Positions 6,285 through 61,564 are shown, counted from the first letter of the stretch. The stretch: 64,000 nucleotides of DNA from Ostrea edulis (GCF_947568905.1 NC_079164.1:109306001-109370000), one strand, 5' to 3'. The notes: generated from the sequence alone by a model not told the origin. Made by a program: numbers and translations.

Positions 6285-6800
6285 AATCCACATTTTGGTT
6301 CCATTTCTTGAAGCAGTCATTGTCCTCACAAAGGAAGACCACACTGGTTGCTTTTGACAATCACTTCATGTCTTCTTTTGTTTTTTTTGTGTGCACTGAC
6401 TCCTTTTCTCTATTTTTAATTGGCCAGTGTGAATTTTCACAGTTGATGACATTGGACTGAATTTTCCTCCTCCTACTCTCTCTATATCCACCAATGAGAA
6501 GTTTTGTCAGCTCCGTTCTAAAGCTGAGCTTGGTCCTTGGTAATTCTCTTCCACTTTTGGCGACAATTTTGTTATTTTTGGACTCTTTCACAGAGATGAA
6601 ACTGTTTACAATCGCTATGTCCACACAAAAGCAAAATATATATTTCCACCATTTGAGGGCTTTACGATGTGTCCTGTAGATCATTCGGAGTTGGTCGGCT
6701 TGATCAACCCCAAATGTGTAACGATTGTATATCTGTCCAACCGAAAGACAAGGAACTTCTTTGATCATGCCATCTTCCTGTTTTCTTTGAACAACCAATG
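6285..6800 (-). pseudogene. piggyBac transposase 3' fragment (third-Asp region to cysteine-rich domain)
   Basis: ORF 6361..6798: YNRYTFGVDQADQLR...KWWKYIFCF...AIVNSF. A frameshifted CRD follows (...RHEV...NQCGLPLCEDNDCFKKW). Clearly similar to the intact element at 23.1-24.8 kb. No termini found. Confidence 0.85.
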
Positions 6801-7214
6801 TTTTTTTTTTTTATATAATTTTTTATTTTTGTGCACATACCGGTATATCAGATATATAATAATATTATATCCAGAGAAGAAAAAAACAACAAAAAAAGAA
6901 CAAAAGAAACAAAGCATATGAGCTGAAGGTATGTGGGATTTGAGAGAGAAAGAAGAAGAGGAAGAGAGAGAAGTTGAGAAAACAGAATTGTGATTGAGAT
7001 GGACCAAATTGTCTATGCCGATTTTCCAGATTTTAAGCACTAAAGTTATCCCAAAGGACCTTACAAGTTACATGATCAGTCGATGTATGATAAATGTTAT
7101 GAGGAAAAGAGGATATTGTTATGGAAATGGAAAGAAAATATACTTTCTAAGTACATTAGAAGTTAGCTGCAATAATGTAGCCCTCTCTGATTTGATTTTT
7201 TTTTTTTTTTTTTA

Positions 7215-7947
7215 GGGAGAGGGCTACAACTCCTTAGGATCTCCGTAATGGTGCAAATGCGGGAGTGATTCACTCCCGCAACATTTGCGCTCATTCTAAA
7301 CATTTCCTGACTTTCTTTACGTAAATAAAATGATATTCTATGTTTCTTAGTCAATATATAAATTTACAACCTGCAACTTTAGATTTGTGAGGCTCTATTC
7401 TACCGTTTTCAACAATTTTGATAAATTCCAATTTCTCGATTCATATTTGTGCGCCATGTTTGATGTACTGAAGTTTCAACTTCCGGTTGTCAAGTCATTT
7501 GCATATGCCATATAAGGTAGTATTTACATCAATGGACAAGTATGGAGGCGAAAGCTATTTTGTCGGTATTGAAAAAGGTTTGAATTTAATATCAAGTTAA
7601 AAACCGAACAGCAGAGTGTAAATTCTTTCTGCAACAATATGATTTTCCTTTATTTGTCGAAGTGGCTCGAGTAACTACATTTTCGCGCTGATTGTCAATG
7701 TTTAGGCTTTTCATTATATCCACCTACGAGATCTCGCGATAACAAGCATGGCGGAGCAGACGAAGAATTTTGCATGCTGTACATTATATTTAATGAAAAA
7801 CACCTTTATTAGACATGCCCGAGCACAAAGTTGGTACTCCTTTTGGTGTAAACAACATTTGGAACTAATACACAGAGTTTATTATCGTTTATTCATGAAA
7901 TTATTTTGCACCATTACGGAGATCCTATGGAATTGTAGCCCTATCCC
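7215..7947. mobile_element. Non-autonomous DNA-transposon-like element with ~43-bp imperfect TIR
   Basis: GGGAGAGGGCTACAACTCCTTAGGATCTCCGTAATGGTGCAAA (7215-7257) vs reverse complement of 7905-7947 GGGATAGGGCTACAATTCCATAGGATCTCCGTAATGGTGCAAA (3 mismatches). No TSD identified. Confidence 0.7.
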
Positions 7948-8175
7948 GAAAACGTCAGAATAAAAAAAAAATTGGATAGGGCTACATTATTGCAGCTAAT
8001 TAGAAGTAAATGAAAATGTTTTTTGTGATATTTCTTTTCAATGTTGCAGTCTATGCCAATTCGATGAGGTCTATGTCATCTTGTTTTGGCATAGACTCGT
8101 GGTCTATACCAAGTTTAAAATCAATTTCAAACACTGAAGTCACTGTCATTTTTCTAGTGATCCTGAAAACTCCCT

Positions 8176-8236
8176 TGTTTTTATGCCTCCGAGATAGAAG
8201 TGTTTTTGTCCTGTCTGTAATTGTCATTCTGTCTGG

Positions 8237-8268
<32 letters not shown>

Positions 8269-8269
8269 A

Positions 8270-8303
<34 letters not shown>

Positions 8304-8340
8304 ATATTAGGGGAACATACCTGGTTGACCTCTGGTGTAA
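8176..8340 (+). mobile_element. Helitron/Helentron-like non-autonomous element, 5' fragment
   Basis: TTTTTATGCCTCCGAG...GTCCTGTCTG...AACTTTAACCTTGCTAATAACTTTTGAACAGTAAG; near-identical to 18440-18545. Confidence 0.65.
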
Positions 8341-8359
8341 GCATACAGAATCTGAATTA

Positions 8360-8470
8360 CCTGCAGGGATTGACATTAACGGTTGTCCGATGGCCTGAGG
8401 CAAGTGAAAACCCAGTTTGGACAAGTGAAACTCAATGCACACTTGCCCTATGGGGCAAGTGATTATTTTA
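8360..8470 (+). repeat. Dispersed repeat (transposon-end-like); inverted copy at ~39645-39755
   Basis: GCAGGGATTGACATTAACGGTTGTCCGAT...CACTTGCCCTATGGGGCAAGTGATT matches the reverse complement of 39645-39755 (AATCACTTGCCCCATCGGGCAAGTG...ATCGGACAACCGTTAATGTTGATCCCTGC). Confidence 0.7.
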
Positions 8471-9914
8471 GTATTAAATGTGATTAAATTGATTGTGTTA
8501 GGTTGATGAATATTAGATATTAGAAAATAATGTCTAGCTACTTTTTGATTTGTTCTTTACGGAATTGATTGTTTAGGCCCCTTTTTAGTAGATCATAACA
8601 TATTTTATCAGTAAGTCGTTTCTAATAACATAACTATCTGACATACAACTTATCTTGGAGAAAATGGGGGCTTCACAACCGTATCTCTAATATTTAGAAA
8701 GAAGGCAATGTTGAGAAGAAAAATAAATTGTAGATCGCTACACAAGGATCTGAAGTAACCCAATAGAGGGTCATGTCCATATAACCTTTCGTTTGGAATA
8801 TTAATGAGAACTATCAGCGAATTAGATTGCGCCATACAGATAACGGCACACGTACTCGCTAATTCTGTACTTCTGCTTTGGATTTCATCATTGTTTTGTT
8901 CTGGCTCATCGCCTTTGTCAAGTGTCGATCAGCTAAGATGCGCTTGCATTTCGATTTTGATTTCTGATCAATTTGTTTCCTGTAATACTTCGCATTGTGC
9001 GACTTTTTTTTTTTCATCAGTTCGTACGCGATTTCGTACTGGTCATGTTTTCCTTGCGAGAACACAAAACACGCTGTAACATGTACATAATGTAATACCT
9101 AAATTCTTAAAAGTTAAATTAATGGTTTAGAACATATTCAGGCCAATACCTATTTTTCAGTCAAAACTCGGCGTAATGTTTTATATCTGTTAAACGAATT
9201 CTCCTAGTACAATTTGCTGTATTATCAGGACCACTCAAACGCTTCAAATAAAACGCATCTCGGTCATTTAGACGCCGAGAAGATAAACACGATACACCGA
9301 AAAGATAAACACGATACAGGGTGTGTTTTTTTTTTATTTCTTTTTTTCCCGAGTTCGAGGGTTGTTCGAGTTGGGAATTTTTTACTTATAAATTGGGAAA
9401 AAAGGGCACTTTCTGGGATGGGAATGGGGCCGAATATCGGACCCAATTCAGGTAGATTGACGGCATTGATGATCAATTGAATGGGTACTGGTACCAGTAG
9501 CAGTGGGTAGAAAAAAATCGCTGAAATAAAAGTCGTCAACATCATTGACCAAACAAAATCGGAAATCACTTCAAATTTTATTTTCTGTATGTCAAACCCG
9601 ATCAAACATAAGTAAACAAAATGGCGAGAGATATGAAGGACGGTAACAGCGACATTCAGCAGTCAAATAAATGAGTCTTATCTCTGTGAGATTATAGATA
9701 AATTCCATTACTTGATATATTGAAATTCTGATTTATTCACCTGTGAACAAAATGAAACAAAGAAGTCTAATGTTGTTTCCATACATTTAATGATTCTGTT
9801 ATTTATTTTGAGGGGAAAACACTTAAATGCCAATTCCGATTATCGATTACATGTGTCCGATTATTGCCAATAATCGATTATGGTTTTTGGTCCGATTGCC
9901 CATCACTATGTAAT

Positions 9915-10178
9915 AGAATCCGGTTAGAATAGGTCCTCAGTACCCCTTGCATGATGTAAGAGGTGACTAAATGGGGAGGTCCTTTGGATGAGACCGCAAA
10001 AACCGATGTCCCGTGTTGCAGTAGTCGTGGCACGATAATTAAGGATCCCACCCTGCTCAAAGGCTGTAAGCGCCAAGCATAATCCTAAATTTTGCAGCCC
10101 TTCACTGGTAGTGGTGACATCTCCATACGAGTGAAAAATTCTCAAGCGGGATGTTTAACAACATTCAATCAATCAATT
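9915..10178 (+). mobile_element. SINE-like element (5'-truncated) with (CAAT)n tail
   Basis: GATGTAAGAGGTGACTAAATGGGG...AAAACCGATGTCCCGTG...TTTTGCAGCCCTTCAC...CAATCAATCAAT resembles mollusc tRNA-derived SINE bodies (recall). A related fragment lies at ~55022-55070. No intact A/B-box head visible. Confidence 0.55.
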
Positions 10179-10396
10179 AATGGACTTGGTCGATAAAAAA
10201 ATTTCTAATTTAAAGCTACTTTGTAATTTAATACTTAGAATATTTGCTAAAATAAAAAAAGTACTCCAAATTTGGTGCAACAGACTGTGCCAATCTTTCT
10301 TTCAGTTACCTTCAGGATTCTGTTGATGTGGACTTTGATTTGCTCTTTCATAACATGACGCAATGATGTAACATTATCTCCTGTACCATACATTAA

Positions 10397-12659
10397 CTCT
10401 TTCCCCTCAGGGCTATAAAGATAACACTGGTTTATATACTATGTACTGTTTGGCTGCTGTAGCCTTATCTCCTCACAGATCTGCAGTACTGATAAGACTC
10501 ATTTCCTCAGGCAGTTTCAGAAATAAACAAATAAATGATGGTGCATCTAGTTTTAATGCTATATATTCATAATTATTTGATAAATGTATAGTAAACTATA
10601 TATTTTCTTTTTCAGAATAACCTCACCTTCAAATTGATGTTATTAAAAGTCCATTTTTCAAATTACACACAGAGATACTTTAATGTAAATTTGTCAACAC
10701 ATTTGAAAAACACAGATATATTTCATATTTAAATGCCATACAAAATCAAATTTAATCCAAGTCTTTTCATTTTCATTGTCAATTATGGTATGTAAAGTGG
10801 CATCCATCTTTACACAAATGTACATTACATACTTTGCACCCATAAACAGTTTCTTTTCTTTCCTTTCTGCTGGTGTGAACATGGCACCTACGTTTTGAAC
10901 CCATGTGGGTAGATTCATGTCCAGCAAAGTTTTGAGGGTCAACAACAGCATCTGCACCTTGTGTAGATTTCCTTTTTCTTCCACAAAGCTAGCTATCAGA
11001 TGGTGTGCCAATTCCATCCTAAAATCCACATGAGTGAATCTTTTTTGTGAATTTCTCCTTTGGGATGAGCTTGTAAACATGATAAATGCGTTTACAATTG
11101 CACAGTTCATCATGAAATGAAATATATACTTCCAAGCTTTTTTGCTGTCTCTTTCCAAAGGATATTTCATCGTAAGCTGGTCGTGTCTGTCCACACCGTT
11201 CATATATTTGTTATACTCATTTGCAGCATGAGGTTGGGTCAATTGCAAGACTTGCCTTCCATTTTGTCTTGTCATTGGCACTTGTAGACGTGGATAACTG
11301 AGGGTACTTAGAAACGCAACTGGCTTTTTATCCTGCCACACAGAGGCTGTCAGATTCCCTTTTTGACGGATTTTTGATTCGCCTCTCTGCATGCGTAAGC
11401 GGCCTTTCAGGTCATTTGGAAAACCTCGACGATTCGTCCGTACTGTCCCACAAGGGTAAATTTTCTGGGCTAGGAGGTCTTCCATGAGTTTCACACTGGT
11501 GAAGTAATTATCAAAGTAAACATGATAATTTTTGAAACATCAGCTGATTTCCCCAAGTATATGTTAAAGTCTGTCAAAAATGCACTCTCGGAGTCGCAGC
11601 AAACTTTGATGCCACGTTTGATTGGTTTGGCAGGCAAGTACTGTTTGTATGATAGCCTGCCAGTCCGCTTGATCATCGCTTCATCAATGGCCATATTTTG
11701 GTGTGGTCTATAGTTGTTTTTGAAATTCCCATGGGCCATTGTCAAAACTTCACGAACTTTATAGAGTTTGTCAAAGTTCCGGGCACCCATGGCTGGTTCA
11801 CTGGCTCTGTCACTGAACATGAAAATATTCAGTTAATTTTTCGTACCTGCGTACCGTCGTTATAGATTTAATTCCCTCGTTTCCAAGGAATACATCTTTG
11901 GACCAGTAATCTTTGTAAGATGGTAGTTCATTGATCCCATTACAATTGTCATGCCTTCATTTCTTGCTCTGTAGTACGATACCAAACGGGATCGTCTTGC
12001 TCTTTCTGGTTCATTTTCCACGTTGCATAATTATTAGTATGTCTAACAAAGTCTGCAATCATTCCATCACTAAACATTAGATAGAAATAGTCCTTGGCAT
12101 TTGCATTTCCTGCATCAAAATTATCAGGAAAAACGGGTCCAGTCTTTTGACTAAAACGATCAACAGTGACGCGACGGAGGTCGTCACTCCATACTTCATT
12201 TTCTGTCTCAGATTCGCTTGATTCATGGTCATCTTCATCACTGCTAAATACATCCGAAAACCTTCAAACTCGCTGGAATCGTCATCTGAATCAAAATAAT
12301 CTCGCAATATATCTGCATTTGTCGGCAAGTCCGCCATGTTGGAAATCAACTTTCGTTGTTCTTACCATGCATGGGAATAAACCTATTTATTATTAGGTAC
12401 ACATACTTTGATGACACTACACACACTTTATTTTTATTGACCAATGGTATTACTTCAACATTGCACCTACTCCGAATTTGTCTACGTCATAGTCTCGATA
12501 TCATTTGATCTTAAAATAGAGAGTCATCAAAAGACGCTTGTGAGGAAATACCGAAGAGACGTCGAGAGGCGCTTCTGTGGTAATAACAGTCGGGTGTCGA
12601 GAGACTCTTGTGTGGAAATAAGGGATAGGCGTCCAGAGGCACTTGTGAGGGGGAAAGAG
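10397..12659 (-). mobile_element. Full-length but decayed piggyBac element (2263 bp)
   Basis: TTAA at 10393-10396 and 12660-12663; TIR CTCTTTCCCC(C)TCA. Frameshifted transposase from ATG 12337 to ~10779: AIDEAMI, Y(F)DNYFTS, YNKYMNGVDRHDQ; CRD CKVCNVHLCKDGCHFTYH. Confidence 0.92.
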
Positions 12660-12682
12660 TTAAAATCCTAGAACATAACTTT

Positions 12683-13897
12683 CACACATGCCAACTTTTA
12701 AAAATCCCCATGGGGGATTTTGCGCGCTGTGACCTTTTTTCAAAGCTCTAAATTCACGACATTTTACCATGAAAATAAATATTTGTCTTTTCAAATAAAA
12801 TATCTATCTAATCATTGTACATGTATCATATATTAACACAACATCAAGTGTGTTTGACCATTAACTTTAACAAAACTATTTTTAAAAAAAACCACTTTGA
12901 AAGATATACATAATTATTTTATTAAAATCATCTAGCTATTCAGCAAAACACCCTTTCCAAGAGCAAGTCACATACATTTTATCAAATAATACTTAAAGTT
13001 GCATCCTTTTACACCATATAAACATTGGCTGATCTATATATCAAAATTTAAATTAAGCACATGCATTTAGGCACGACTACAAAGACGATCTTGCTTGTCT
13101 GTAAACATGGGCTTGCAGAGTCTGATGGAACAATCTGCATTGCAACCAGAAAAGGAGTGATCTGCCATGCTATGAAGTTTGCGAACAAAACCTTTGCACC
13201 GATGAAATCTGAAATAAATACCAGGGAAAAAACCCACATCAAAATATACGTTTTTACTTTTAAATTAAGGCTACTTGCTAATATAAAATTCAGTAGAGAC
13301 TTGTGCGAATTACTCATCACAAAGACTATATAATACATCGCTGTATACAGATAGATTCGGATAGCCTATATTATTATAGTTGGAAAAAAATATATTTGAC
13401 ATACCTATTGCATATTTTGAATGCTGTCAGCGAGAGGCAAAAATCAGGAATGTCCGATTGTTTGATGGTGACACTCATCGTTGTCATTCACGTTTGTGTA
13501 AAGGATATGTCAATTTGAAATCCGTCTTCCCTATTAATTACTATCAAAACATGCTTCCCACTATCCAATAAACATCCCGACATAGGCAGACCAGGTAAAT
13601 TACACCACCTGATACCACGCGACACAGCTAAACAGCAATGACTGACTATTAGGTAAACAGCAATGACTGACTATTGTCCCGATTTCTGATTTACCAGTTC
13701 AGAAATGACTCCGAAATGATGCGGGATTTCAAATTCCGGTTGGAAATCAGGGTTTGTTGTCGTAAAATGGGAGATAGTTTTAGAAAATCAGGATTTCAGG
13801 GGTATTTTTGCAATCATGATCGGGATATCTGGATTTGTCTTTTCAACTGCTTCAAATCAGGAGAATCCCGCACAAATCAGGAAAGTTGGCATGTATG
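12683..13897. mobile_element. hAT-like MITE ends
   Basis: CACACATGCCAACTTT (12683-12698) / AAAGTTGGCATGTATG (13882-13897), 15/16 inverted match. Flanks show no 8-bp TSD, so the two ends may not be one insertion. Confidence 0.45.
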
Positions 13898-16800
13898 TAC
13901 TGTTCTCATTAAAGTGAGGTCGTCTTTACTAGTATAATTTATGTATAACTTGGATTGGTGATCCAGATACATTCAGAGATTATATATCAAACTGTTCACA
14001 ACCGTGATGTGATGATAATGAATTTGCAAACACTGTTGATGTCTTCTGAATTTTGATAAATAATTAGGAATAGAAAAATCATTTGATAATTTAAAGTGAT
14101 GACTTACTAACAACAATGCTGATTGGATGAAAAACTTGTTATAAAAAATTTTTTTTTTTGTAAATTGCCACTGCTTGAATTTTTCACTCTCAACATAGTT
14201 CCACACTCCTGTGTATAGTATTTTGCGAAGTCAATGATTTAATGACAGGAACATAAATTTTGTTGGAGCCTTTTTCAATAGTTATTGTAAAAAATCTTTT
14301 TATAGCCATAAATTATTTCAAAAGTCTTGGTTATATTGAATAGCCAATGATGTGTTTCAAAATATTGAATCCAAGGACAATAGCTCTGTTTTCATTAAAT
14401 TATTTATCAAGTCTATTATGAGATAGATTTCCTTTATTTTTGACAAACATTTTACCAAGGTGAAAAGGAATCATCTGTCTTTTCATGAAATTGTGTAAAA
14501 TTTTAATCCTGAGCCAATTTTTAATGGCTCAACTGTATGGCGCTAGAAATCGTTTTTTTATGGGGGTATATACATACTCTGGAAGCTATAGATTTGAATT
14601 TACAGTATATACTACCACACAAATGATTATTGATCACAAATATCTAGACATATCGTATTGTTTATGTATTTTAAAATTATGTATGAAGTACAAGTATTTA
14701 CATATTTTTATTTATTTTAAGTATATATTATTTATTTTGAAAATTATTTTTACCGGTAACTGATATTCTTTCAATTTCAACTAATCTATCGTTTATTGGT
14801 AAAATTGAACTACGAACCCAATTTAATATTGAAATATTCATATGTATACCGGTGAAATATATTTCATAAAAGATTGAATATTGTTAACAAATAATAATTT
14901 AGATCATCATTCTTGACTCTTAAAAACTCGATTGTTGATACAATGAATTATACCTGAATCCCACAATAACAGTTTTTACCACTAAGTAAACATGGTGTCA
15001 GGTACTAGTAATTAGGAGACCATTAATAATTGCTTAGGTAACCAAGTGATCATTGCCCATACATGTAATAGATCAAGGGTTGCATTTAAACCCCAAACAG
15101 ATATGGCTTGGATATGGAGCACCTCATAATTATTAATTTCTCAAAATATTTTTTGAAACATAGATAAAAACACTAGAGCATTGACTTGAAATTGTCAACC
15201 GTTTCTGACAAAAATGTGTACCAACTTAAAAGCGGGTCAATGGCAAATTCCTACAAAATAACCTTTAAAAATACAACCGACTTATAGGTGGACCGACTTA
15301 TAGGCGAGTATATACAGTATTAAGGAAAGGTATGGATTTTTTTCTCATAAATAACTATAACAGATGTACATATACTAATATAAACAGAAAAAATGATATT
15401 TAAACCATATGCTATAAGGAAAATGCGTCCACATTTTTTTTTTTTTTTTTTTTTATAACATTTTGGACATGTCATTCTAAAACTCGAACATATTGAAAAT
15501 GACATGTGTTTTAGTTATTAACATGTTTCCCAATAAATAAATGCAATTCAAAAGATATTTTGTTGTTTTTATTTTAAAATAACAACAAATAACTGTTTCC
15601 AATGAATTTCATAAAAATCTACATAGGGGTACATGACTTCAGTGGTGTCTGTAATAAAAATCAATATGGAAATCCTTAACTGTTTTGCCTTTTTTCATTA
15701 CTCTGAATGTTAATTTATTGATTCCAAACAAAAAAAATGCTTCCTAAACCCCAAAAAATCCAGGACCAAGGACCCACCTTAAACAACTTTTAGATTAATT
15801 GCTTTAGAGTTTGTTATGAATCCATTGATAAGTGAATGTGTATTTAGAATTTTGGCTCAATTGGAGCTGATGTAGAATTTGTTGTGCTTCTTGAAAGTAT
15901 CAATAAAGAATGTAGAGTGATTTTCATATTTTTAGATAATCCTAGAGTTGCACTCTTATTTCACTGCTAAAGTTTACACTTGATAAACTTTTCTTCATGG
16001 GATGTCATATGGTAAGACCTTTAACTTGGGTTGTATTATATGAAAAATATCCATAAAATGAAATAAAACAATCAAAATTCACATTTCATATGTGAAATTA
16101 AATTATTTATAAATTTACATTTCCAATTGTTTTCTAGAGATGTGATAGCCTTTTGAAGCTCAATGTGTTATTTCTCCAAAACTTGCATCCGGATGTAAAT
16201 TTCTCAGTTCATGAAAGGTCAGTGGTTACTGGTCAGGGACTTTGGAAATTAACATGGATTGTCGCATATTTTCTATTCTGCAGTATTTTTGATATGTCAG
16301 TTTTATATTTTCATTTTTATTTCAAATATAGATGTATAGGAGTCACTGTTTGGTTTGTTGGGTGTGTGAGGTGATTAACAACATTGGAAAACAAGATAAA
16401 TAGTGCCTCTTCAAAGTATGATAAAGAAATTTTATAGTGATTTTCATATTTTTGGATAATCATAAATTAGTAATTACTTTACTGCCAAAGTTTTTGCTCT
16501 TCAACTCTACCCTTCAAAGCTGTTCTATAAATTAATCTTGTTTCCACTGTAGTTTATCACCTCGCATCCTTGTAAACTAGACAGCGATTTCTTAGTGAAA
16601 AAATGTAACAACTATAGATTGTTGCTGTGACATGTAGTTTATAAAGATTTCTTTTTATGTTGTATAAAAGAATTTTTAAAAAAAAGAAAAAGAAAGAAAA
16701 AAAATCATAAAAAGGCCAAAGGAAAAAAACAACCCTTGAAGTAACAAAGATTTATGAAATAAAAAAAAAAAACAAAACAAAAGGAAGAGAAAGAATGCAA

Positions 16801-17313
16801 GAAAATTTGAAATGAAACAATGAATGAACGTCTTGTTACTTTGTAATATTGTTGATTGGTGAAGTGACAGTGATACATGAAGCAAGATTTAGATTTGAAA
16901 TGTGCTGGTTTAGTGTGTATTGAAAGTAATATTCAGAACTTTTTACTGAAATAATGTCAGAATGATGTGTTTCAACATGATTACTAAAATGTATTGTACT
17001 TTGTACCTTTTAATTAATTAAGAATGAATGTCAAATTCCATAGTTCAGTGCTCCTGGCAGTACACTACATACTTTTTTGAGCACTTAGAACAGTCGGGCC
17101 ACTTCAAATGATTTTTACTAGACCTACCTAACATCTGTGGTTTATAAACGTAAACTGCCTCAAACCAATTTATATCGTATAAAATAATTTTTTTTTTAAA
17201 AATACATTCCTTAATTACATTTATATCTATTTATTGGAAACTAAACTTTCTACACATTCACATTTTTAATCAGCAATGAGTAGATGTTGTACAACATCAC
17301 TTCTGGCTGCAAC

Positions 17314-17472
17314 TTATTTATTTACAACTAAAAATACACATTAAGTTGTCATGCGGTTTAGAATTATTTATTTACAACTAAAAATACACATTCAGTTGTC
17401 ATGCGGTTTAGAATTATTTATTTACAACTGAAAATACACATTCAGTTGTCATGCGGTTTAGAATTATTTACA
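17314..17472 (+). repeat. 50-bp tandem repeat, ~3.2 copies
   Basis: TTATTTATTTACAACTAAAAATACACATT(A/C)AGTTGTCATGCGGTTTAGAA starting at 17314, 17364 and 17414. Confidence 0.95.
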
Positions 17473-17787
17473 AAGATTTTGCAGTTATTTCTTAGAATAA
17501 AATAAAGTTTCTTGTTTATTTTTCCAACACGATCAGTTGGACTAGAAAACTGACATTTTACCTGGCTGCAGGACTCGTCATTTAGTAGACTTGGTCAGTC
17601 AGATGTGCCTTTGTGTCAAACCCTGGTTTTGCACAGTTTGAGAAATCTGTCCCTTATTCACATATAACAGATAGTGTTCATTTTCAAGTGTAGACATGCA
17701 CTTATAGTCAAAAGATACTGATTACCAGAGACGGGGAGGGGAATCTTAGCTTTTTGAAGTGGGTTCAAATTCTCTTGGAGACTATTA

Positions 17788-18471: not shown

Positions 18472-18508
<37 letters not shown>

Positions 18509-18514
18509 AAGTGA

Positions 18515-18546
<32 letters not shown>

Positions 18547-18614: not shown

Positions 18615-18654
<40 letters not shown>

Positions 18655-52251: not shown

Positions 52252-52377
52252 ACTTTCGCAATGCGGTCAAACGTGGAGTGGTACAACTGTAATTATTTTC
52301 AAATAATCACACATACATACAGTTTTTCTTCAGGAAACTCAAAGAAATAAATGTTCCATATCCTGTGACACTTTTTG

Positions 52378-52391
52378 CACCGCTGCCACCA
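52378..52391 (-). promoter_or_regulatory. Primer-binding site, tRNA-Leu type
   Basis: TGGTGGCAGCGGTG abuts the 5' LTR; complementary to the 3' end (...CACCGCTGCCACCA) of metazoan tRNA-Leu(AAG/TAG). Confidence 0.85.
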
Positions 52392-52541
52392 TGTTGATAA
52401 CGGCCAGAACGGACACTTTAGTACACGAGCATACAACACAGACTTCACAGGAAAACAGATTTATAAAGAACTGCGCATGCGTGCATTGCACTAAACTACG
52501 GAAACACATAATGAACATAATTACGATACATAATATCAACA
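52392..52541 (-). repeat. 5' LTR
   Basis: 150 bp, 149/150 identical to the 3' LTR. Confidence 0.97.
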
Positions 52542-53226
52542 CATTTCACAGTCATCGTCTAAAACAATGTTCATTTTCCTCTCACCTCGGAAGATGGGGG
52601 CGTTTACATGGAGATTACCCTGAATCCATGTGTCTCCAAACTCCGCGGTTCCTTCATCGTTCTCCAAATCTTCCCGGTTAAAACCTAGAAATTCTTTGTC
52701 TGAATCTTCATTTAGAAATATTTCTCTTTAAAAAAATCTCTATTCTCGGCATCTACTTGGTCTAAAATAGCGTTTCCATCCATCACATCTTCTACAACCT
52801 CCATCTTGTTCAAATCTCGTAACAAAGCACTCTACTCGGGTTTCGTTTTCTAATAATATGATATTAGTAATTCCCTGAATAAGCCAATCAACACAAAGAA
52901 ACAAAAATAAATTCTTCTGTTTTTAGTATTTCAAGTCGGGGTGAATAGATTCTCTTTATTTCATTGGTTAAAATAAGAAAGAAAACGTCATATGTTGAAA
53001 GTCGAAATATTGACGACCGGCAGTGAATGAAAAACATGGCGGTGCTCACTTTATCGACGACCGGCACTGTGAGCGTGTTATCTGGGTCGCCGATTTATCG
53101 ACGACCGGCAGTACAAGGGTTAAGAAATCGCAGACAAATCATTGATTTGAAGATGATTTGTAAGTGATGCAAATTCCCATGCAAATGAGCTAACAAATCA
53201 CTCTTAACAAATTGCAAGCAAATCAC

Positions 53227-54360
53227 TTTTTATACGCCCGTCTTAGGACGGGACGTATTATGTTATGGCCTTCATGTCCGTCCGTCTGTTAGCTTTTTCG
53301 TGTCCGGCTCATAACTTAAATACTATGAGGCCTAGAATAATCAAACTTTGTCAGATGATGCATCTTGGGTAGAAGGTGTGTCGCACATTAAAACCAGGTC
53401 GCTGTGACTTTTAATTAAGAAGATATGACCAAATATGGCAAAACCCTGTCCGACTCATAACTTGAAAACTATGAAACCTAGAATCACCAAACTTGGTCAA
53501 ATAATGCATCTTAGGTAGAAGGTGTGTCACACCCTACTTTAGGGTCACTGTGACATTTAATTAAGGATATTGTTTGTTTTTTTTTTTATAAAAAGTGTAT
53601 GTTTTAATGGGTACAATCCCTTCTGATCTAATGGTTTTTTTAGTAACCTTATTCAAAAATGTTACATCAAGAAAATACATATTTTTTAAGATATACTGTA
53701 CAGTTTTTTAAAGCCTTTATAATGTTTCTTTTGTTTCTAACAGTAACAAGAGAAATTCCACTTGTCCCATGGGGGTAGCATGCAAAGGGCATTTTGATAA
53801 GATTAATTAATGGGTTTAGTGTAAGAAGACTGTCTTAATCACTTCTGGTAGAGCATCTCTGATCAAGCAGGTGTTATCTATATCTCTAGGGAATTGGGCA
53901 GAAGGAATCTAAGCCTCTTAATTAGTAGTGATCTGTCTTGGTGGTTAGCCTTTATTTTCAAAATGAAGTTATCAAAATTAATTTGACATTGTACAATATA
54001 ATTTTTTAATTTTTTCTTTTCTTAGCAACCAACATGCAGAGTGTCATTTCTGAGTAAGATGAACAGATGGTTGCAATATGTATATAGGCATATTTTAATG
54101 ACAAGTAATTTGATGTTTTATTAAGATGTGGCAATAAAAAGATATACAATGAGCAAAGCTGCAGATTTGGCATTTGTTTAAATCCAAAACTACCAGTTGA
54201 AAAAATATAAAAATGCACTATTTGTTTTCATTAAAAAACTACAGCAGAGAGAAGTACATATAGCATTATGAATGATTTTCTTTCATCCACTCTTCTCTGT
54301 TTTGTGATAATTAAATAATGATTGACGGGCGTATCATGTGCTGTGGCGATGCACTTTATT
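53227..54360 (+). mobile_element. Helentron-like (HINE) element
   Basis: 5' TTTTTATACGCCCGTC..GACGGGACGTATTATG; 3' subterminal GACGGGCGTA (54324-54333) followed by a GTGC...GCAC hairpin and a T-run; internal tandem unit at ~53310 and ~53450. Confidence 0.75.
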
Positions 54361-54404
54361 TTTATTTTCTAGAATGTATAGACAATGCATGTATATATAA
54401 CTGC

Positions 54405-54640
54405 AAACAAATCACAACCAAATCACTCTGAATAAATTAACAAATCACTTCTGATTAACAAATCACTACCAAATCACTCTGAATAAATTGTTTACCATTC
54501 TCTTCTGTTTAACAAATCACCACCAAATCACTTAGAATAAATTGTTTACAAATCACTTCTGTTTAACAAATCACAACCAAATCACTTGGAATAAATTGTT
54601 TACAAATCAATATCAAATCACTCTGAATGAGTTGTTTACA
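54405..54640 (+). repeat. Degenerate AAATCAC-based tandem array
   Basis: More than 10 copies of (C)AAATCAC in units like AACAAATCAC(A/T)ACCAAATCACTCTGAATAAATTGTTT; the same motif occurs at 53135-53226. Confidence 0.8.
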
Positions 54641-55949
54641 AAATGCATATCATGCATTTTCATTTTACAATTAAACCACAATACTAGCTCCTCCTATAGC
54701 ACCACAATGTAGCAATGAAACAATTTTTAAAAAATGCATACTTTATAAAAATGACTTATGTGCAGTTCATACGTAGTTCTTATCAACTACATGCTCACAA
54801 TTTCCTTCAACTTGAGGCATATATATATTGGTTACAAAAGGAGATTTTTATGTCAACTTATTTACACAGAATAGGTGCATAAAACACATACTAAATGCAT
54901 GGCGCACAACAATTATCTAAAAATTATATTAAAAAAATAGGCATCATGCAACTAATCCCTGACCAAGGGCTTAATTGGCTAAATAAAGTGAAAGTTGCAT
55001 GTTTTTGGATGAATTAACCTTAAAAACCGAGGTCCCATGTTATGGCAGATAAAGACCCCTTGGTGCTCAATGAGGATTGGCCCAAGTGCAGAGTACAGTA
55101 CACAACACGAGTTTTATACACCCCACCATGGAAAGACCACAGTGGAAAATCCACAGAGATACACTGTGTCCTCCATGTTCCATGGTGTGTGTTATTTGCG
55201 AATACACACAGCTGCTAAGAGCTTTGTTCTGGCCATGGGCACCTTGTGGGAGATGTGAAAATGTGCTGCAGGCCAAATAATCAAGATAAGGGTGGAATTT
55301 TAAGAAAAGAAAAAAATGTCAATATTTTCCCCCCTGATACTTATATTGTTTTCCAGCATTTTGAGCCAATTCCAACGATACCAAACACTATATATTATGT
55401 TTTTAAGAAAACCTGGTTTTGAATTTATTTTTTTTAGTCTTCTTTTCTTCCTTAAAATATTCTTAAATTCTATGTTTAAATAATGCGTACTTGCAGGCAA
55501 TTCTTGTTTGAATGCGAATTAGTATATTCAGTAAATGAAAAACATACATGTACAACAGGTGATAGGGATATTTAATAATTACCGATGTGCTCTCTCTCTC
55601 TCTCTCTCTGACAAATGCGCTGTTTAACATAATTACTTTATTAGTAAAGGGGGTAGCAGTCTGAAACTGTCTCAATTCCCCCTTCCGACTTCAATTTCTT
55701 AAATCGTGCAGTGGGTAGGTCCTAAGCTAAATCCTTAACTTTCAAGCTTTTAAATTACACACTCTCCGATTCTACGTGCTTGTAATCAATATTTAAGGAT
55801 GTAAATCCTCGGTGTCAAATACATGTACAACTAGTTCATGAAAAAAGACTAATATCAATATAGACAGAAATAACTTAACGATTATTTGCTTTTATTCATA
55901 TACGCTATCGATTATTAAAATCTTTAATTTAATCTTTAGATACATTAGA

Positions 55950-55953
<4 letters not shown>

Positions 55954-55991
<38 letters not shown>
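55954..55991 (+). repeat. (GA)n microsatellite
   Basis: Uninterrupted GA run of ~19 units. Confidence 0.97.
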
Positions 55992-55993
<2 letters not shown>

Positions 55994-56743
55994 ATTGGTA
56001 ATCATTGATTATAATATTCATGAAAGTATGCAGATACGGGAAGTTTAAAACGTTCAGTATAAATCTTGAAAGGACAATATCTTTCTGATTAATTATCCAT
56101 CCCCTTTCATTCTGATATTTTTTTTTTAATTTCCCATTTTGCTTTCTTTACATGTTAAATTTTTCGGCTCGACCGGGTTAGGACTAATGAATTAGCACCC
56201 CCCCCCTTACAACGATGTTACGTGCTTAGCTGTCTATCTCTTTCTCAGTCAAAAATAAAATAAATACATGCTATATATACTGCAACATCATTGGATTTAC
56301 TGGATAATTCTTCGACTTCACTTTCATAATACATGTTAATGCAAGCGGGCTATCTAGGAATTTTTTCCCCATCTTCGCTAGCCAAGATTATTTGTACACG
56401 AAGGCACAGTTGACCCAAAACCCATTGCTAGTGGAGATGAGATGAATTTTACCCCCGTATTATGTTATAACTGACCAAAACCTAGTACGTTTGTTTTTCA
56501 ACTTTCATTCAGAGGACGCGCGTTTGTGAGTCACTGAATAAACGAGAAAACGTCTGCATTTTTATTTCAATCGTTGTCAACTCTATACTTTGTGATATTT
56601 CAAGACTACGGTACATGTACTGAATTCAATTTATTGGATCTCATCACCATTATGCAGTGGTATACAAAAATATAAAGACAAAAAGCTGTTTTATATACAT
56701 TTAGTAAATAATACATGCGTGTAATAAAGTATTTATCAAGTTA

Positions 56744-59700
56744 GGCCAGCATTTTTTTATTTTTAGGTTTACGAACCCAAGAATTATTAAGTCCCAGAGG
56801 AGGAGGAAATAAAAAAAAAAATAAAAATCCATATTTTGATTCATTATCGACTTTATTCTGTAATGTACATTTATTTTCGCTGTTTCTTTGATGCTCGTGT
56901 AACCGGCTCCTTTCCACTGGCTACACAGTGGTTACAAATGGGACGAACAAGATAGTTCGACCTTAAATTGTTTATTTCATCGTTATCAGCCAAATCTTCG
57001 TCTTTGCCACAATGAAAACACACAGACTCAAACACCTGGGCAGTTCCTGTTATAAATAATGAACTATTTTGATATTATGTTTGTCATAAGTTACCAACTA
57101 CCTCCATAGAGCATATATATTGTGAGGCTGTAGAATTGTAGACAATTTTCAAAATTCTCATAAAATGCATCAATTAAAATGAGTACCAGAATAGTATGTG
57201 GTCTCCATGGGGCTCTGACAATTCATCCCCTCCTTAACGATGATAATATCTTGGTAAGCACCACCAGGGAAAAGAGGGTTACCACATGAGTAAAGCAGCT
57301 CTTCCTTCACACGAGTGACTGCGGTTTCTTGCTCCCTAGTTAGTTTTGCAGCAGAATACACAACCCGTCTTTTTCCACAGTCATGGCAGACAACATAGTT
57401 GCGAACTTTGGCTATTAAATAAAAGAACAACATATGATGGATGAAATAAATAAAAACTTTACCATTTTTGATGTTACCAACATCGAAAATGGTAAAGAAT
57501 ATCAAATGAACTTGTTTTGAACACATTTTTTTTAAATATCAGATTGAACAACATTTAACAACTTAAAATGTACCCAGCAGAAGTTTAAACTTTGTTAACT
57601 GACACCATTTAAAATGATTTTCAAGTAAACATGTAACAAACCAGCAACAAGCATGGTCTTGAATTTTTTGTCTCTCTCTGTAAGTTCAGGTTTTTTGTGC
57701 AAAGAGGGTCTATCTGAATCTGATGTTTCAGTGCCATAAACTTCAGTAAATGGTTTGAATCTGCCATCACATCCCAATACTGGGTCAGGTAAGAAAGAAA
57801 GCTGTTCAAACACATCATGAGGAAGTCTAGGTGGGTTAATTGTGCAATATGAGCAGCAAGCATCCTTGCACTTCTTCAGCTGAAATTTATGATCCAGTGT
57901 CCTAGCCATATTATATTAGCAAGCAGGTAGAGTGTGCAATAGGAAAGTTAGTATACTAGCTGAGTATGAAAAAGCATGAAAGAATGAGTGTTCGTTACAA
58001 GATTAGTACATGCACTGTTTCTTTGATCAAGCTCAATTTAATGCATATCTAAGCTTCATAAATAATTAGGATACCAAAAGCTAGCAAGCTATTATTCTAC
58101 GAAGGGACATTAACTAATACTTCACACCATTATATGTCATTTTAACATGCAAAAATTACAATGCATATTACCATACCTGAAAGGAATACTGGCGAAACCT
58201 TGCATGTGACTTCATGAATGCATGAACCATCCTAGATTTTTCAAAGTTTGAAATATCTTCTGTTTTGTAGTCTTGATCGAGCACATGAATAATTTCAAGC
58301 AGATCTTTGATTTCTCCATCTGTTGCTGCACTGTGCACATGAGCAGGTTTTCCTTTTAGTTTAAGTTTCTGAAATCGTTCAGAAATAATAGTGATAGGCT
58401 CCTGAATAGAATCTATATAGTCAGTTTTGAAATCTGGATTTTTCTCAGCATATCTTCGTATGGAAGCAAGTGATGTCAATCGCTTTGCTTGTAGCTCTCT
58501 TCCCTCAGACATGGCTGTACGACAAAGGGCGGTATTCTGCAATGCAATATTCAAAATTGACATCATCCTCTCTGCAGGATTATTATAGCTTTGGTTTGGG
58601 GCTGTTCTAACACAGACTAGCAAGTCTAAATCCAAACTTATAAATTCCAGCAAAGCAGCAACTTGAACAGAGCGAAATGTTGTCCTGTGGTCAGGACCAC
58701 CATCTGTATAACGGAAGAGTATTGGCTTATCCAAATTCACATCATCATGACTATGAAACTCCCGCAAAATGTTGATGGTTTCCATACCATGCCTAAATGG
58801 AGTGGAGCTCTGGAATACCTTGTCTTTCAGTGTAATATGTAAGGTTCCTGAATGAAATGAATCTCTGGAATTTTCAGGAATAGACACTTGAAAGCACACT
58901 CAAGGTACCATCCCAGCAATGCTGTAATCGTGATCGAGACAAAGTAGGCCTTTGCTATTGCTAATTGTCAGTCCTTGATGATGTGCCCTAACACCAGTGG
59001 AAACAGGTCGGTATGGTTCACCTATGGGTACGATTGCTTTATCATCAAGACACTGCATGTGAGCAAATTCCCTGTACTGGACGGCCATGTCTTTCAACAT
59101 GTAGAACTGATGTAAGGCAAAGGATGCATCATCATGTTGTGCACGCAGCAATCGTTGCTGTACAGCATATTTAACATTGAATCTGCCGGTGTAGTTTGCT
59201 GCCGTTTTAGCCATTGGGTTAGATGGCATGAAATTCAGTCTGATCCAGGAATTTGAAGGAGTCGGATCACCTGGAGGAAGTCTTGCTTTCACTTGTTCTC
59301 GTAAATCATCAATAGAAATTGCAAATGGAAGATAGGATGTTGAATGCTGGCGGCGATCATCCACTGTTGAAACCTCCTCCAGTAACTTGGCAAGTTCATC
59401 CCAAAATGGTTGTAGCTTCGGGTCACAAGGACGGCCATTGTTTTTCCTAAGGTCCACTATTAAGTCTTCATCATCACTAGATAAAATAAACTTCAAGAAT
59501 CGTTCATCAACAGCTGCAGTGGTTTGATTCTCTGCACAGTATTCAAAATTTGTAAGCTTGAAGAACATATTTCTCAGTTCATATGGTTTCAGATTCGGAT
59601 ATCTTTCAAAAAACTCTTTCCTTATTGCTCTGGTAGAAAACACAGGCATTTTGTCCTTAATGTGAGTCACTACTTCAAGTTCTTTTTCAGCACTTCTTTC

Positions 59701-61564
59701 ATTTGCACATGGTATTTTCCATAAAAAAAGTGAATTGCCAATGTAGTTCCCAAAACTGATTGAAAACAATGATACTGGAAATGGTAACACGCTCTCTATC
59801 TTCATTCTCCATTTGCGCCTATCACTCACCTCACTAGGTTCAAAATTGTCTAATGGGACTGCTTCGTAAGTATCCAAGGTTTCAAGTTTTGAAATAAGGG
59901 ATTTACAGTCAGTTGGTACAGACTGACCTGGATTACCTGAAATATTAAATATATTTAACAAATTTTGTTTGTGAGAAAATGATGAAAAATTGTCAGATGC
60001 CTTTTATTTATATATTAAAGAAATCTTTAGGCCTTCCTTGTATTGAAATTTCTTTGATGACACGTACATTGTACCATTATTTTGGCCCTTGCTATTCAAA
60101 ACTTTGACCTTGTGATGATGTTTTAAATACTGACCCTCTATAGACTTTAAGGACCAATTGTCGTTGAGAGATCTAACAGGTGTAGGGGATGCATGGTTTT
60201 GGTTGGTACGCTCCTGCTGATTTGCTAGAAATTTATGGTATTTCTCCAATGCCTTGTACAGACCATTCACACATTTGTAAAATACTTGAAAGCGAGGATT
60301 CGTCCACCATGGATACATCAGTACCTCTGCTAAGGCATCTAGACTGGCCTTAAGTTCTGGCTCTTTCATCTGTAAAAACAATTTAGTCACTGTATGTTGT
60401 TGTTATCCTATTTCTAAATAAAATATTGAAGTATTTCAGTAAAAACTAAGACACCCTGGACATGTTTGTTATTTTTTTTTTTTTTTTTCAAAACAATAAT
60501 CCAAAATATCAAATATCATTTTCACATAGCAATCAAGTTTACCTGTACACCAACATATTTTTTATGACACTTTTTCAAATCTCTGTATCCACAAAAGTAG
60601 AGCTCGTCTGGGATCTTGCAGGATCTTTCCTTCATTTTGTCAAGAAAAGGGTCAATAAACCAAAGAGTTTCCACTAGAGTGTTGATGATCTTTGATCCAA
60701 TATCCTGCTGTTGTCTACGAAAACCAACTTGAAAGGTATCCATACATTTCTGAAGAACATCATTATAGAGCTTGTCCTTATTGTTTGATGGTGTCCTTCT
60801 ACAAAATTTTAACAAAAATTCAAAAACTTTGAAATAAAATTTCAAGAGGAACACTATAGCTATATACATGTAAAGTGAAAGTAGCTCAAAAAGAGGATTT
60901 GCTCGTACATTGCATTTTAATATTGCCGACTTTTAAAATTACATGGTTTTTTGTTGTTGTTGTTTTCTTTTTTTTTTTTTTTAGGGTTTTTATTACTTGA
61001 TAAGAACTTACTTGGGTGGGGGCAGCCAGTCATAAACTCTGTTTACATCATGGAGCACATCAAAAGCATTTCGTTTAGTTGGTTCGGGAACTGCCTTGGC
61101 GTTGTTTTCATAGTATACCACTAAGTATCGCACCCCAAATGCAGCGACAGTATGCATTGGCATGTCGTTCGGTATTTGCATCGCATTTTCACTCTGCCTT
61201 GAATTTGCTTCATCTGGGTCAGTCTTAAAACCCTCAATTTTCACCAAATGCCTCATCTCACCAACATACCCCTGAACAACAAATTCCCCAGCAAGTTGGG
61301 TGTCCTCCGATCGAGCGAAAACTTTCCGAACGGCACTCCCGTCGATATATTTAATACTAAACCAGGCCATACACGTTTTCTCCATCAAAGCGCCATGTTT
61401 TCATCAACCGGAAATACGAGTTCGTAAATTCAAAATCTCGATCCCGATACAAATTTGACATCGGAAAGAAAAAAAATCCCAATTTTCTCAATTTTATTTT
61501 TTTTCTGAAAATTCGAAAAAGCGAGCGGCGGGTTTGTAAACCTAAAAATAAAAAAATGCTGGCC
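56744..61564 (-). mobile_element. Zator-like DNA transposon (4821 bp)
   Basis: 35-bp TIR GGCCAGCATTTTTTTATTTTTAGGTTTAC(G/A)AACCC, 34/35 match (56744-56778 / 61530-61564); TTA TSD on both sides. GG termini with a TWA TSD are Zator hallmarks. Confidence 0.88.
56871..61385 (-). pseudogene. Spliced Zator-like DDE transposase, 7 exons, 1087 codons, one in-frame TGA
   Basis: Exons 61385-61012, 60798-60543, 60369-60135, 59936-58177, 57879-57642, 57411-57187 and 57046-56871; all introns GT-AG with matching phases (2,0,1,0,1,1); total 3264 nt. Motifs LDDKAIVP, LDHDY, YTDGGPDH, TAP..S..NPAER; Cys-rich C-terminus. TGA at 58900-58902. Confidence 0.85.

What the first reader, a model, noticed from the sequence alone, without database searches (positions are those of the whole stretch)
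6285..61564. All recognisable transposon genes face the same way: candidate uni-strand piRNA cluster / transposon trap
Seen: nine piggyBac pieces, one Gypsy, two DIRS remnants and one Zator (13 of 13) are all on the minus strand, as is the orphan ORF at 29.5 kb. For independent, orientation-neutral insertions the two-sided chance is 0.5^12, about 1 in 4100; nesting makes independence approximate. Established: cut-and-paste elements insert at TTAA/TWA in either orientation, and near-uniform antisense orientation of diverse TEs marks uni-strand piRNA clusters such as Drosophila flamenco. Inference: a long plus-strand precursor here would yield antisense piRNAs against four TE superfamilies, and, unusually, mostly against DNA transposons rather than LTR elements. 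The non-coding SINE (9.9 kb) and the GAPVD1-like exon are plus-oriented exceptions.
Basis: partly seen in the sequence, partly recalled or inferred. Interest (0 to 1): 0.82.

Follow-up and report, generated by a model that had tools for sequence, protein, structure and literature searches.

The report
Co-oriented piggyBac-rich transposon trap candidate
About 75 kb next to a housekeeping gene has collected at least 13 unrelated mobile elements, nine of them piggyBac, all pointing the same way. This is the layout of a one-strand piRNA-producing "transposon trap", but no RNA data exist here to prove it.

Summary
At equal thresholds, 13 of 120 minus-strand ORFs hit transposon Pfam families and 0 of 123 plus-strand ORFs do. 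The same-strand run continues 17 kb past the window, to about +81 kb. It holds 13 classified elements, all minus: nine piggyBac, a tyrosine-recombinase element, a Gypsy, a Zator-like element and a hAT. Beyond +81 kb orientation is mixed. To the left lies a minus-strand G-patch gene that points away.

The piggyBacs are separate families with TTAA duplications and nearest relatives elsewhere, so these are independent insertions.

About 27% of the genome's roughly 84 piggyBac loci lie in four co-oriented clusters covering 0.02% of the genome. One of them, on contig C4, also holds hAT, Zator-like and Harbinger elements in the same orientation. Another, on C5, starts 1 kb downstream of a convergent UTP25 gene.

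The best reading (about 0.5) is a unistrand piRNA-type source locus acting as a trap, unusually rich in DNA transposons. No RNA run was available, so piRNA production and the direction of transcription are untested. Rivals are an unseen long plus-strand gene or lncRNA, and an insertion hotspot.

The scan's first stage had already noted this same stretch as a piggyBac hotspot.

The parts
6289..6801 (-). piggyBac transposase C-terminal remnant
   Evidence: PF13843 E=4.7e-9; tblastn 45% identity to the 23-kb copy.
10697..12257 (-). piggyBac remnant, frame-broken. An orphan family whose best relative elsewhere is 45% identical.
   Evidence: PF13843 E=2.7e-26 and 1.6e-16; tblastn; own-genome search.
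22804..25164 (-). Full-length 2.36-kb piggyBac with an intact 557-aa ORF (23139-24809), TTAA on both sides and imperfect terminal inverted repeats. It is nested in a repeat that carries the tyrosine-recombinase ORF.
   Evidence: PF13843 E=3.6e-84; copies at 98-99% identity elsewhere define the ends; the ends were read.
25685..27091 (-). Tyrosine-recombinase element remnant (DIRS-, Crypton- or Ngaro-like), two ORFs
   Evidence: Phage_integrase hit E=0.009, below the Pfam cut-off. ESM Atlas: 21 named eukaryotic Phage_integrase clusters, best score 0.98. Multicopy repeat.
27673..28246 (-). piggyBac remnant covering the N-terminal half of the DDE domain
   Evidence: PF13843 E=8.7e-28; tblastn.
29920..30312 (-). 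piggyBac transposase N-terminus with an acidic D-F-E-G-F motif, probably the same element as 27673-28246
   Evidence: Read from the translation. Inference; no Pfam hit.
32677..34985 (-). 2.3-kb piggyBac with TTAA on both sides, about 15-bp perfect terminal inverted repeats and a 410-aa open frame
   Evidence: PF13843 E=2.4e-85; copies at 94% identity on C1:13.2 Mb and C10:8.57 Mb define the ends; the ends were read.
40655..41735 (-). piggyBac remnant. Its nearest relative, at 94% aa identity, is on C2:54.14 Mb.
   Evidence: PF13843 E=8.3e-34.
46513..47738 (-). piggyBac remnant (DDE domain plus zf-Tnp_2). Its nearest relative, at 96% aa identity, is on C5:33.12 Mb.
   Evidence: PF13843 E=5.3e-46 and PF13842 E=4e-6.
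47866..52541 (-). Gypsy-type LTR element with 159-nt LTRs (97% identical, TG..CA ends) and a 1272-aa gag-pol ORF. A young family of four copies.
   Evidence: Protease, RT, RNase H and integrase domains; LTR pair; copies at 98-99% identity.
56745..61571 (-). Zator-like DNA transposon, 4827 bp, multi-exon, with a broken frame in this copy. It is inserted in a very high-copy repeat.
   Evidence: ORF run; no Pfam hit; atlas lead to the ISAZ013-type DDE family at 0.78; six other copies at 99-100% aa identity; a contig joint from 56744 to 61572 in all four DNA runs.
6289..64000 (+). Inferred plus-strand transcription unit, antisense to all the elements above. It continues to about +81.05 kb beyond the window end.
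   Evidence: Inference only. No RNA evidence. Extent taken.

Best explanation
The stretch from about 6.3 kb to about 81 kb (window coordinates) is a unistrand piRNA-type small-RNA source locus that acts as a transposon trap. On this reading a long plus-strand precursor starts near the unmethylated-looking region between the divergent G-patch (GPATCH3-like) gene and the first piggyBac. It runs through the minus-oriented insertions and yields antisense small RNAs against each trapped family. Insertions in the opposite orientation are not retained, because they give no antisense guides and carry terminators and splice sites that would truncate the precursor.

Shown: the co-orientation, the independence and diversity of the insertions, the bounded domain, the extreme piggyBac enrichment, and the recurrence at other loci.

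Inferred: transcription, its direction, small-RNA production, and selection on orientation.
For: 1. 13 of 13 classified elements from five superfamilies are on the minus strand between 6.3 and 81 kb. No plus-strand ORF has a Pfam domain, against 13 on the minus strand.
2. The insertions are independent. TTAA duplications and terminal repeats were read. Nearest relatives at 94-99% identity are dispersed on other contigs, while copies within the cluster are only 30-48% identical.
3. Ages are mixed, from 99-100% identical families (piggyBac at 23 kb, Zator-like, Gypsy, hAT) to an orphan remnant. A long-lived trap would look like this.
4. The domain is bounded. The first plus-oriented elements lie at 81.5 and 83 kb and the right flank is mixed. 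On the left is a minus-strand G-patch gene whose 5' end faces the domain.
5. The pattern recurs. About 23 of roughly 84 piggyBac loci lie in four clusters, and adjacent pairs less than 100 kb apart are 19 same to 1 opposite in orientation, P = 4e-5. C4:6.995-7.096 Mb holds hAT, two Zator-like, Harbinger and piggyBac elements, all minus. The C5 cluster, all plus, begins about 1 kb downstream of the stop of a minus-strand Utp25 last exon, so read-through from that gene would be antisense to the elements.
6. Precedent: in Drosophila, strand-biased transposon enrichment in 100-kb windows predicted clusters that small-RNA data then confirmed as unistrand (PMC10643416). Mosquito core clusters are read-through-driven traps with antisense inserts (10.1101/2022.08.22.504762).
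Against: - There is no RNA evidence at all. The four runs that hold this DNA are DNA-like contigs.
- The bias is seen only for protein-coding elements. A/T homopolymer runs (26 to 26) and AATAAA hexamers (96 to 103) show no strand asymmetry in the domain.
- Among non-piggyBac DNA-level repeat pairs within the domain, four are direct and one is inverted, too few to weigh.
- CpG depletion in the domain (o/e 0.55) does not differ from the unbiased right flank (0.59).
- piggyBac is over-represented relative to Gypsy (at least 3487 Gypsy candidates genome-wide against about 120-250 for piggyBac). A passive trap does not explain this, so an insertion preference is needed as well.
Confidence: 0.5

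Rival explanations
1. The domain is a giant intron, or the body of a long non-coding RNA, of an unrecognised plus-strand Pol II gene. That gene might share a bidirectional promoter with the G-patch gene. Autonomous elements inserted in the sense orientation act as gene traps and are purged, leaving only antisense copies. No small-RNA function is involved.
For: Antisense bias of transposons in introns is established knowledge, and piggyBac prefers transcribed regions. The region from -8 to +4 kb has a promoter-like CpG o/e of 0.7-1.0, next to a gene body at 0.2. Exons shorter than 62 aa would have escaped my scan.
Against: - No plus-strand Pfam domain lies in the window.
- The G-patch gene is on the other strand and runs away.
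- No VPS9 exon lies within reach, so this is not a real GAPVD1 gene.
- The domain's CpG o/e of 0.55 is not the 0.2-0.4 of neighbouring gene bodies.
- Ordinary introns do not explain 9 of about 84 piggyBac loci in 75 kb.
- The C5 cluster lies downstream of a stop codon, not in an intron.
- Known intron biases are about 2-3 to 1, not 13 to 0 (my knowledge).
Confidence: 0.2
2. The locus is an insertion hotspot for cut-and-paste transposons, caused by open or tethering chromatin near a housekeeping promoter. The uniform orientation would then be chance or an unknown mechanistic bias, with no role for transcription.
For: The enrichment is extreme and specific to DNA transposons (piggyBac, hAT, Zator-like, and Harbinger on C4) against the far more numerous Gypsy elements. 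The same young families land in several clusters. A first-stage note (s1-302093) reports a shared acidic motif in the transposases, which I saw in two copies.
Against: No mechanism is known that would orient DDE transposases, a retroviral-type integrase and a tyrosine recombinase the same way. Orientation is uniform in all four clusters (19 to 1, P = 4e-5). A piggyBac copy 27 kb outside the domain is inverted.
Confidence: 0.2
3. The co-oriented copies arose by local tandem or segmental duplication of a piggyBac-derived gene array. Tandem copies share orientation automatically.
For: Direct repeat pairs outnumber inverted pairs across the whole 264 kb.
Against: Copies within the cluster are 30-48% identical, while their nearest relatives at 94-99% sit on other contigs. 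Two copies have their own TTAA duplications and terminal repeats. The flanks are not shared. Other superfamilies share the orientation.
Confidence: 0.03

Closest known systems
Drosophila flamenco and flam-like unistrand piRNA clusters (PMC10643416)
   Same: A domain of tens to hundreds of kb. Nested fragments and intact copies of many transposon families lie almost all in one orientation. The domain is bounded on one side by a host gene. It can be detected from sequence by strand-biased transposon coverage.
   Different: flam is dominated by Gypsy-family LTR elements. Here nine of 13 elements are piggyBac, with hAT and Zator-like elements and only one Gypsy. No small-RNA, promoter or tissue data exist. 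At about 75 kb the domain is smaller than flam.
Mosquito core piRNA clusters driven by transcriptional read-through (bioRxiv 10.1101/2022.08.22.504762)
   Same: These are traps placed next to conserved genes, with inserts antisense to transcription leaving the gene. The C5 cluster here starts about 1 kb downstream of a convergent Utp25 last exon.
   Different: The window's own cluster abuts the 5' end of a divergent gene, not a 3' end, so it would need a divergent promoter or one of its own. The mosquito clusters trap viral fragments. Nothing is known here about transcription.
Antisense orientation bias of transposons in introns of host genes (established knowledge)
   Same: Sense insertions are selected against inside a Pol II transcription unit, which gives a same-strand excess.
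   Different: The known biases are moderate and weakest for DNA transposons. No plus-strand host gene was found here. Introns in general do not concentrate a quarter of a genome's piggyBac copies.

Membership tests
Unistrand (flamenco-like) piRNA cluster | Abundant 24-32-nt, 1U-biased small RNAs mapping to one strand | not testable with these tools
   No RNA run holds the stretch. The four holders are DNA-like contigs.
Unistrand (flamenco-like) piRNA cluster | Transposon fragments overwhelmingly in one orientation across a bounded domain | tested here: met
   13 of 13 classified elements are minus from 6.3 to 81 kb, and the flanks are mixed.
Unistrand (flamenco-like) piRNA cluster | Many unrelated families of mixed age, inserted independently (trap) | tested here: met
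   Five superfamilies, at least seven piggyBac families, TTAA duplications, and dispersed nearest relatives.
Unistrand (flamenco-like) piRNA cluster | A single long precursor from a defined promoter, antisense to the inserts | not testable with these tools
   The only context available is a divergent G-patch gene and a zone of CpG o/e 0.7-1.0 from -8 to +4 kb. AATAAA is not depleted on the plus strand.
Intron of a plus-strand host gene | Plus-strand exons on both sides, joined by splicing across the domain | tested here: inconclusive
   No plus-strand Pfam domain in the window. The left neighbour is on the minus strand. No VPS9 hit nearby. Short exons and lncRNAs were not detectable.
piggyBac superfamily (the nine elements) | DDE_Tnp_1_7 transposase, TTAA target duplication, terminal inverted repeats | tested here: met
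   PF13843 hits well over the cut-off in all nine. TTAA and inverted repeats were read for the two complete copies. The other seven are truncated and their ends were not examined.
Ty3/Gypsy LTR retrotransposon | LTR pair flanking gag-protease-RT-RNase H-integrase in that order | tested here: met
   Domain order in the 1272-aa ORF; 159-nt LTR pair with TG..CA ends.
Zator superfamily | Transposase related to the bacterial TP36/ISAZ013-type DDE family; 3-bp target duplication | tested here: inconclusive
   No Pfam hit. The atlas gives a lead only, at 0.78, to PF07592. It is a discrete 4827-bp multicopy insertion. The target duplication was not examined.
DIRS / tyrosine-recombinase elements | Tyrosine recombinase together with RT and RNase H; characteristic terminal repeats | tested here: inconclusive
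   The recombinase is supported (Pfam E=0.009, below the cut-off; atlas 0.98 with 21 concordant clusters). No RT was found beside it, so Crypton or Ngaro is equally possible.

The most novel reading that the evidence does not exclude
The genome holds a small set of gene-adjacent unistrand trap loci to which divergent piggyBac families, and other cut-and-paste families, are actively drawn. One route would be tethering of their transposases to the chromatin or transcription machinery of piRNA precursor loci. New invaders would then 'home' into the trap and be silenced at very low copy number (three to nine copies per family here). This would be a piRNA defence centred on DNA transposons, with targeted rather than chance capture.
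Probability: 0.15. Interest if true: 0.85.

Novelty: new member of a known kind. Interest (0 to 1): 0.6.

Why it matters
If small-RNA data confirm it, this would be a flamenco-style unistrand cluster outside insects, filled mainly with cut-and-paste DNA transposons rather than retrovirus-like elements. It would be one of several such loci that together hold about a quarter of the genome's piggyBac copies in 0.02% of its sequence.

That would make two open questions directly testable. One is the trap model of transposon control: does each active family have a copy in a cluster? The other is whether capture is by chance or targeted. The test needs only one small-RNA library and one stranded RNA library.

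If the locus proves to be a long intron or an insertion hotspot, it still marks an unusually strong filter on orientation or target site for piggyBac.

Tried and rejected
- **RNA evidence.** The one run search found only four DNA-like contig sets. Laying them on 56101-62100 showed that the Zator-like element is a 4827-bp insertion in a very high-copy repeat. The 'empty' joints come from other copies of that repeat, so they say nothing about allelic polymorphism or expression.
- **Control windows and the other clusters.** There is therefore no random-window control, and only about 4-kb glimpses of the C4 and C5 clusters. The C7 cluster is known only from hit coordinates.
- **The 'GAPVD1-like exon'.** It was not found. 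No plus-strand ORF of at least 62 aa hits any family, and no VPS9 hit lies near the window.
- **Local duplication.** Rejected.
- **Annotation-free orientation test from self-BLAST pairs.** Direct pairs dominate everywhere, but the count is inflated by tandem arrays and there are too few independent families.
- **Strand asymmetry of A/T runs and AATAAA.** None was found.
- **CpG o/e as a methylation footprint.** The domain does not differ from the right flank.
- **Rfam and tRNA scans.** Nothing was found.
- **Calls on record for the piggyBac protein.** Only two short Logan contigs, with no gene context.
- **Species identity.** Not established. Run ids were not found in any paper.
- **Costly searches.** The large protein searches were not used, and no structure or complex job was needed.


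Full report
**Where the window lies.** The window is G000:C1:109,306,001-109,370,000 of an 895-Mb animal genome, about 3 Mb from the end of a 112-Mb contig. It has no N runs. I did not establish the species; run and organism names are coded.

**Checking the observation.** Pfam scans of all ORFs of at least 100 aa and tblastn with the window's own transposon proteins place the following on the minus strand:
- piggyBac DDE remnants at 6289-6801, 10697-12257, 23139-24809, 27673-28246, 33010-34679, 40655-41735 and 46513-47738;
- a Gypsy gag-pol ORF of 1272 aa at 48436-52251;
- an ORF at 25685-26311 with a weak Phage_integrase hit, which the ESM Atlas places among eukaryotic tyrosine-recombinase clusters (score 0.98, 21 concordant hits);
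- a run of seven ORFs at 57173-61388 with no Pfam hit.

The last has only an atlas lead, at 0.78, to the ISAZ013-type DDE family to which Zator is said to be related. It is clearly a mobile element, with six other copies at 99-100% aa identity.

The ORF at 29920-30312 reads as a piggyBac N-terminus and probably belongs with 27673-28246. The window therefore holds seven or eight piggyBac loci and about ten independent elements, not thirteen.

As a symmetric control I scanned every stop-to-stop ORF of at least 62 aa on each strand. 13 of 120 minus-strand ORFs hit transposon families: 11 the piggyBac DDE domain, one the piggyBac zinc finger and one the Gypsy pol. None of the 123 plus-strand ORFs did. 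The only long plus-strand ORF, at 28715-29260, is a minisatellite read in frame.

**Extent of the bias.** I fetched 100 kb on each side. Long ORFs stay on the minus strand to +81 kb. Pfam names piggyBac at 69.9-70.6 kb, hAT at 74.7-76.0 kb and piggyBac at 80.1-80.9 kb, all minus.

Beyond that the first elements are plus: a pogo-type DDE_1 at 81.5 kb and a THAP domain at 83.1 kb. The rest of the right flank is mixed: a tnp2-type transposase (plus), a piggyBac (plus), a Copia (minus) and a Zator-like element (minus).

On the left, a G-patch domain lies on the minus strand at -15.96 to -15.57 kb (Pfam E=1.2e-11). Two further coding-looking minus-strand ORFs lie at -10.4 to -9.8 kb and -7.95 to -7.53 kb; the latter looks like the N-terminal exon by my reading. 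The gene that a first-stage note calls GPATCH3 therefore runs away from the window, with its 5' end about 14 kb from the first piggyBac. Between them are LINE and Penelope-like fragments in both orientations.

The co-oriented domain is therefore about 6.3 to 81.05 kb. It holds 13 tool-classified elements, all minus (P = 2.4e-4). The flanks hold 4 plus and 3 minus (Fisher P = 0.007).

**Independence of the insertions.**
- The element at 22804-25164 has TTAA on both sides and imperfect terminal inverted repeats. Copies at 98-99% identity lie on C1:55.7 Mb, on C3:97.4 Mb, and in inverted orientation at +107.7 to +110.06 kb.
- The element at 32677-34985 has TTAA and about 15-bp perfect inverted repeats. 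Copies at 94% identity lie on C1:13.2 Mb and C10:8.57 Mb.
- The 40.7-kb and 47-kb remnants have nearest relatives at 94% and 96% aa identity on other contigs.
- The 10.7-kb remnant has no relative above 45%.
- Within the cluster the copies are only 30-48% identical.

Local duplication is therefore rejected. The Gypsy element has a 159-nt LTR pair and three other copies at 98-99%. The hAT family has about nine copies at 95-99%.

**Is it more than chance?** Orientation alone is not genome-wide significant. About three 75-kb windows with 13 of 13 would be expected if every window held 13 oriented elements.

The piggyBac concentration is significant. A whole-genome scan with PF13843 gave 248 candidates and 119 matches, which I merged by hand into about 84 loci. 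Nine of them lie in this 75 kb, where 0.007 are expected.

The same scan shows other clusters with uniform orientation:
- C5:75,128,049-75,148,183, five elements, all plus;
- C7:13,165,328-13,208,770, six elements, all plus;
- C4:7.02-7.06 Mb, all minus.

Counting neighbouring piggyBac elements less than 100 kb apart across the genome gives 19 pairs in the same orientation and one opposite, P = 4e-5. The merging of hits into elements was done by hand, and the independence of the C7 copies is not verified.

**Other superfamilies in the other clusters.** The C4 locus also holds:
- a 98% copy of the hAT family, at 6,995,193 (minus);
- Zator-like genes at 7,010,468 and 7,095,409 (both minus);
- a Harbinger/PIF transposase at 7,051,310-7,052,071 (minus; PF13359 E=3.5e-19);
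- pieces of the 23-kb piggyBac family (minus).

That is eight of eight minus over 100 kb.

The C5 cluster also holds a deleted copy of the 23-kb family. About 1 kb to its right lies the last coding exon of a minus-strand Utp25 gene (PF06862 E=8e-24). The plus-oriented elements therefore lie just downstream of, and antisense to, that gene's transcription.

**Interpretation.** Uniform orientation shared by DDE transposases, a retroviral-type integrase and a tyrosine recombinase points to a filter acting after insertion. The simplest such filter is a one-strand transcription unit.

Two architectures are seen: divergent from a housekeeping promoter (this window) and downstream of a housekeeping gene's 3' end (C5). 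In both, transcription leaving the gene would be antisense to the inserts. This matches unistrand piRNA clusters. In Drosophila, strand-biased transposon coverage alone predicted clusters that small-RNA data then confirmed (PMC10643416). Mosquito core clusters are read-through-driven traps next to conserved genes (10.1101/2022.08.22.504762).

I put this reading at about 0.5. It does not explain why piggyBac is so over-represented relative to Gypsy, which has at least 3487 candidates genome-wide. An insertion preference of cut-and-paste elements for these loci is probably also at work.

**What weakens it.**
- No RNA run holds this DNA. The four holders are DNA-like contigs, and laying them showed only element boundaries.
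- A/T runs and AATAAA hexamers show no strand bias in the domain.
- CpG o/e is 0.2 in the G-patch gene body and 0.7-1.0 from -8 to +4 kb. It is 0.55 in the domain and 0.59 in the unbiased right flank. This speaks mildly against a long-methylated gene body but does not single out the domain.
- A plus-strand gene with short exons, or a lncRNA, cannot be excluded.

**Limits.** I could not sample random control windows or read the other clusters in full. Rfam and tRNA scans of the window were empty.

**Verdict.** The piRNA-cluster reading is the best-supported explanation but is untested. If true, it is a new member of a known kind with an unusual cargo rich in DNA transposons.

Noticed in passing
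L030:3352-3732 (= C5:75149870-75150250, minus) and C5:75128049-75148828: The last coding exon of a Utp25 gene lies about 1 kb from a cluster of five plus-oriented piggyBac remnants. The cluster is convergent with the gene, so read-through from it would be antisense to the elements.
   Followed up: partly
C4:6995193-7096404 (L031, L035 hold parts): A second co-oriented cluster of several superfamilies: hAT, two Zator-like, Harbinger and three or four piggyBac, all minus. It shares two young families with the window locus.
   Followed up: partly
Own-genome hits of L015:684-2009: The nine closest copies of the hAT family all lie on the minus strand of six different contigs. Two of them are a duplicated pair. 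This is odd and unexplained, and may be chance.
   Followed up: no
window 56745-61571: The Zator-like family has seven copies at 99-100% aa identity. The window copy has a shorter open frame (367 aa against 611 aa). The interior of the element has contigs in run X2 (and its 3' 1.5 kb in X4) but none in X1 or X3. This may be a presence/absence difference between samples, though holes in contig coverage prove nothing.
   Followed up: partly
window 56101-56744 and 61572-62100: The flanks of the Zator-like element belong to a very high-copy repeat, with summed contig depths of 1e3-1e5. Uninterrupted copies, joined by an A-run, are abundant in all four runs.
   Followed up: no
L012:4037-4426 (minus), L013:2049-2468 (minus); -20 kb to +4 kb of the window: The G-patch gene is on the minus strand. 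CpG o/e switches sharply from about 0.2 in its body to 0.7-1.0 between -8 and +4 kb, as at the edge of a germline-methylated gene body.
   Followed up: partly
window 28518-29327: A minisatellite that yields overlapping plus-strand ORFs in several frames, including the longest plus-strand ORF in the window. It sits between the two pieces of a piggyBac.
   Followed up: no
window 29518-29817 (minus): An orphan 100-aa ORF, coiled-coil-like, with only a non-significant CA109-like hit (E=0.003). It lies between the two piggyBac pieces and its nature is unknown.
   Followed up: no
window 8201-8303, 18435-18895; flanks at -94 kb, -34.9 kb, +115.1 to +115.8 kb: A repeat with internal tandem units of about 140 bp occurs at five places over 210 kb, always in direct orientation.
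   Followed up: no
window 5805-6205 and flank +78816 to +79230: A 415-bp direct repeat at 94.7% identity lies just downstream of two different piggyBac remnants (at 6.3 kb and 79.6 kb). It may be the shared 3' end of one family.
   Followed up: no
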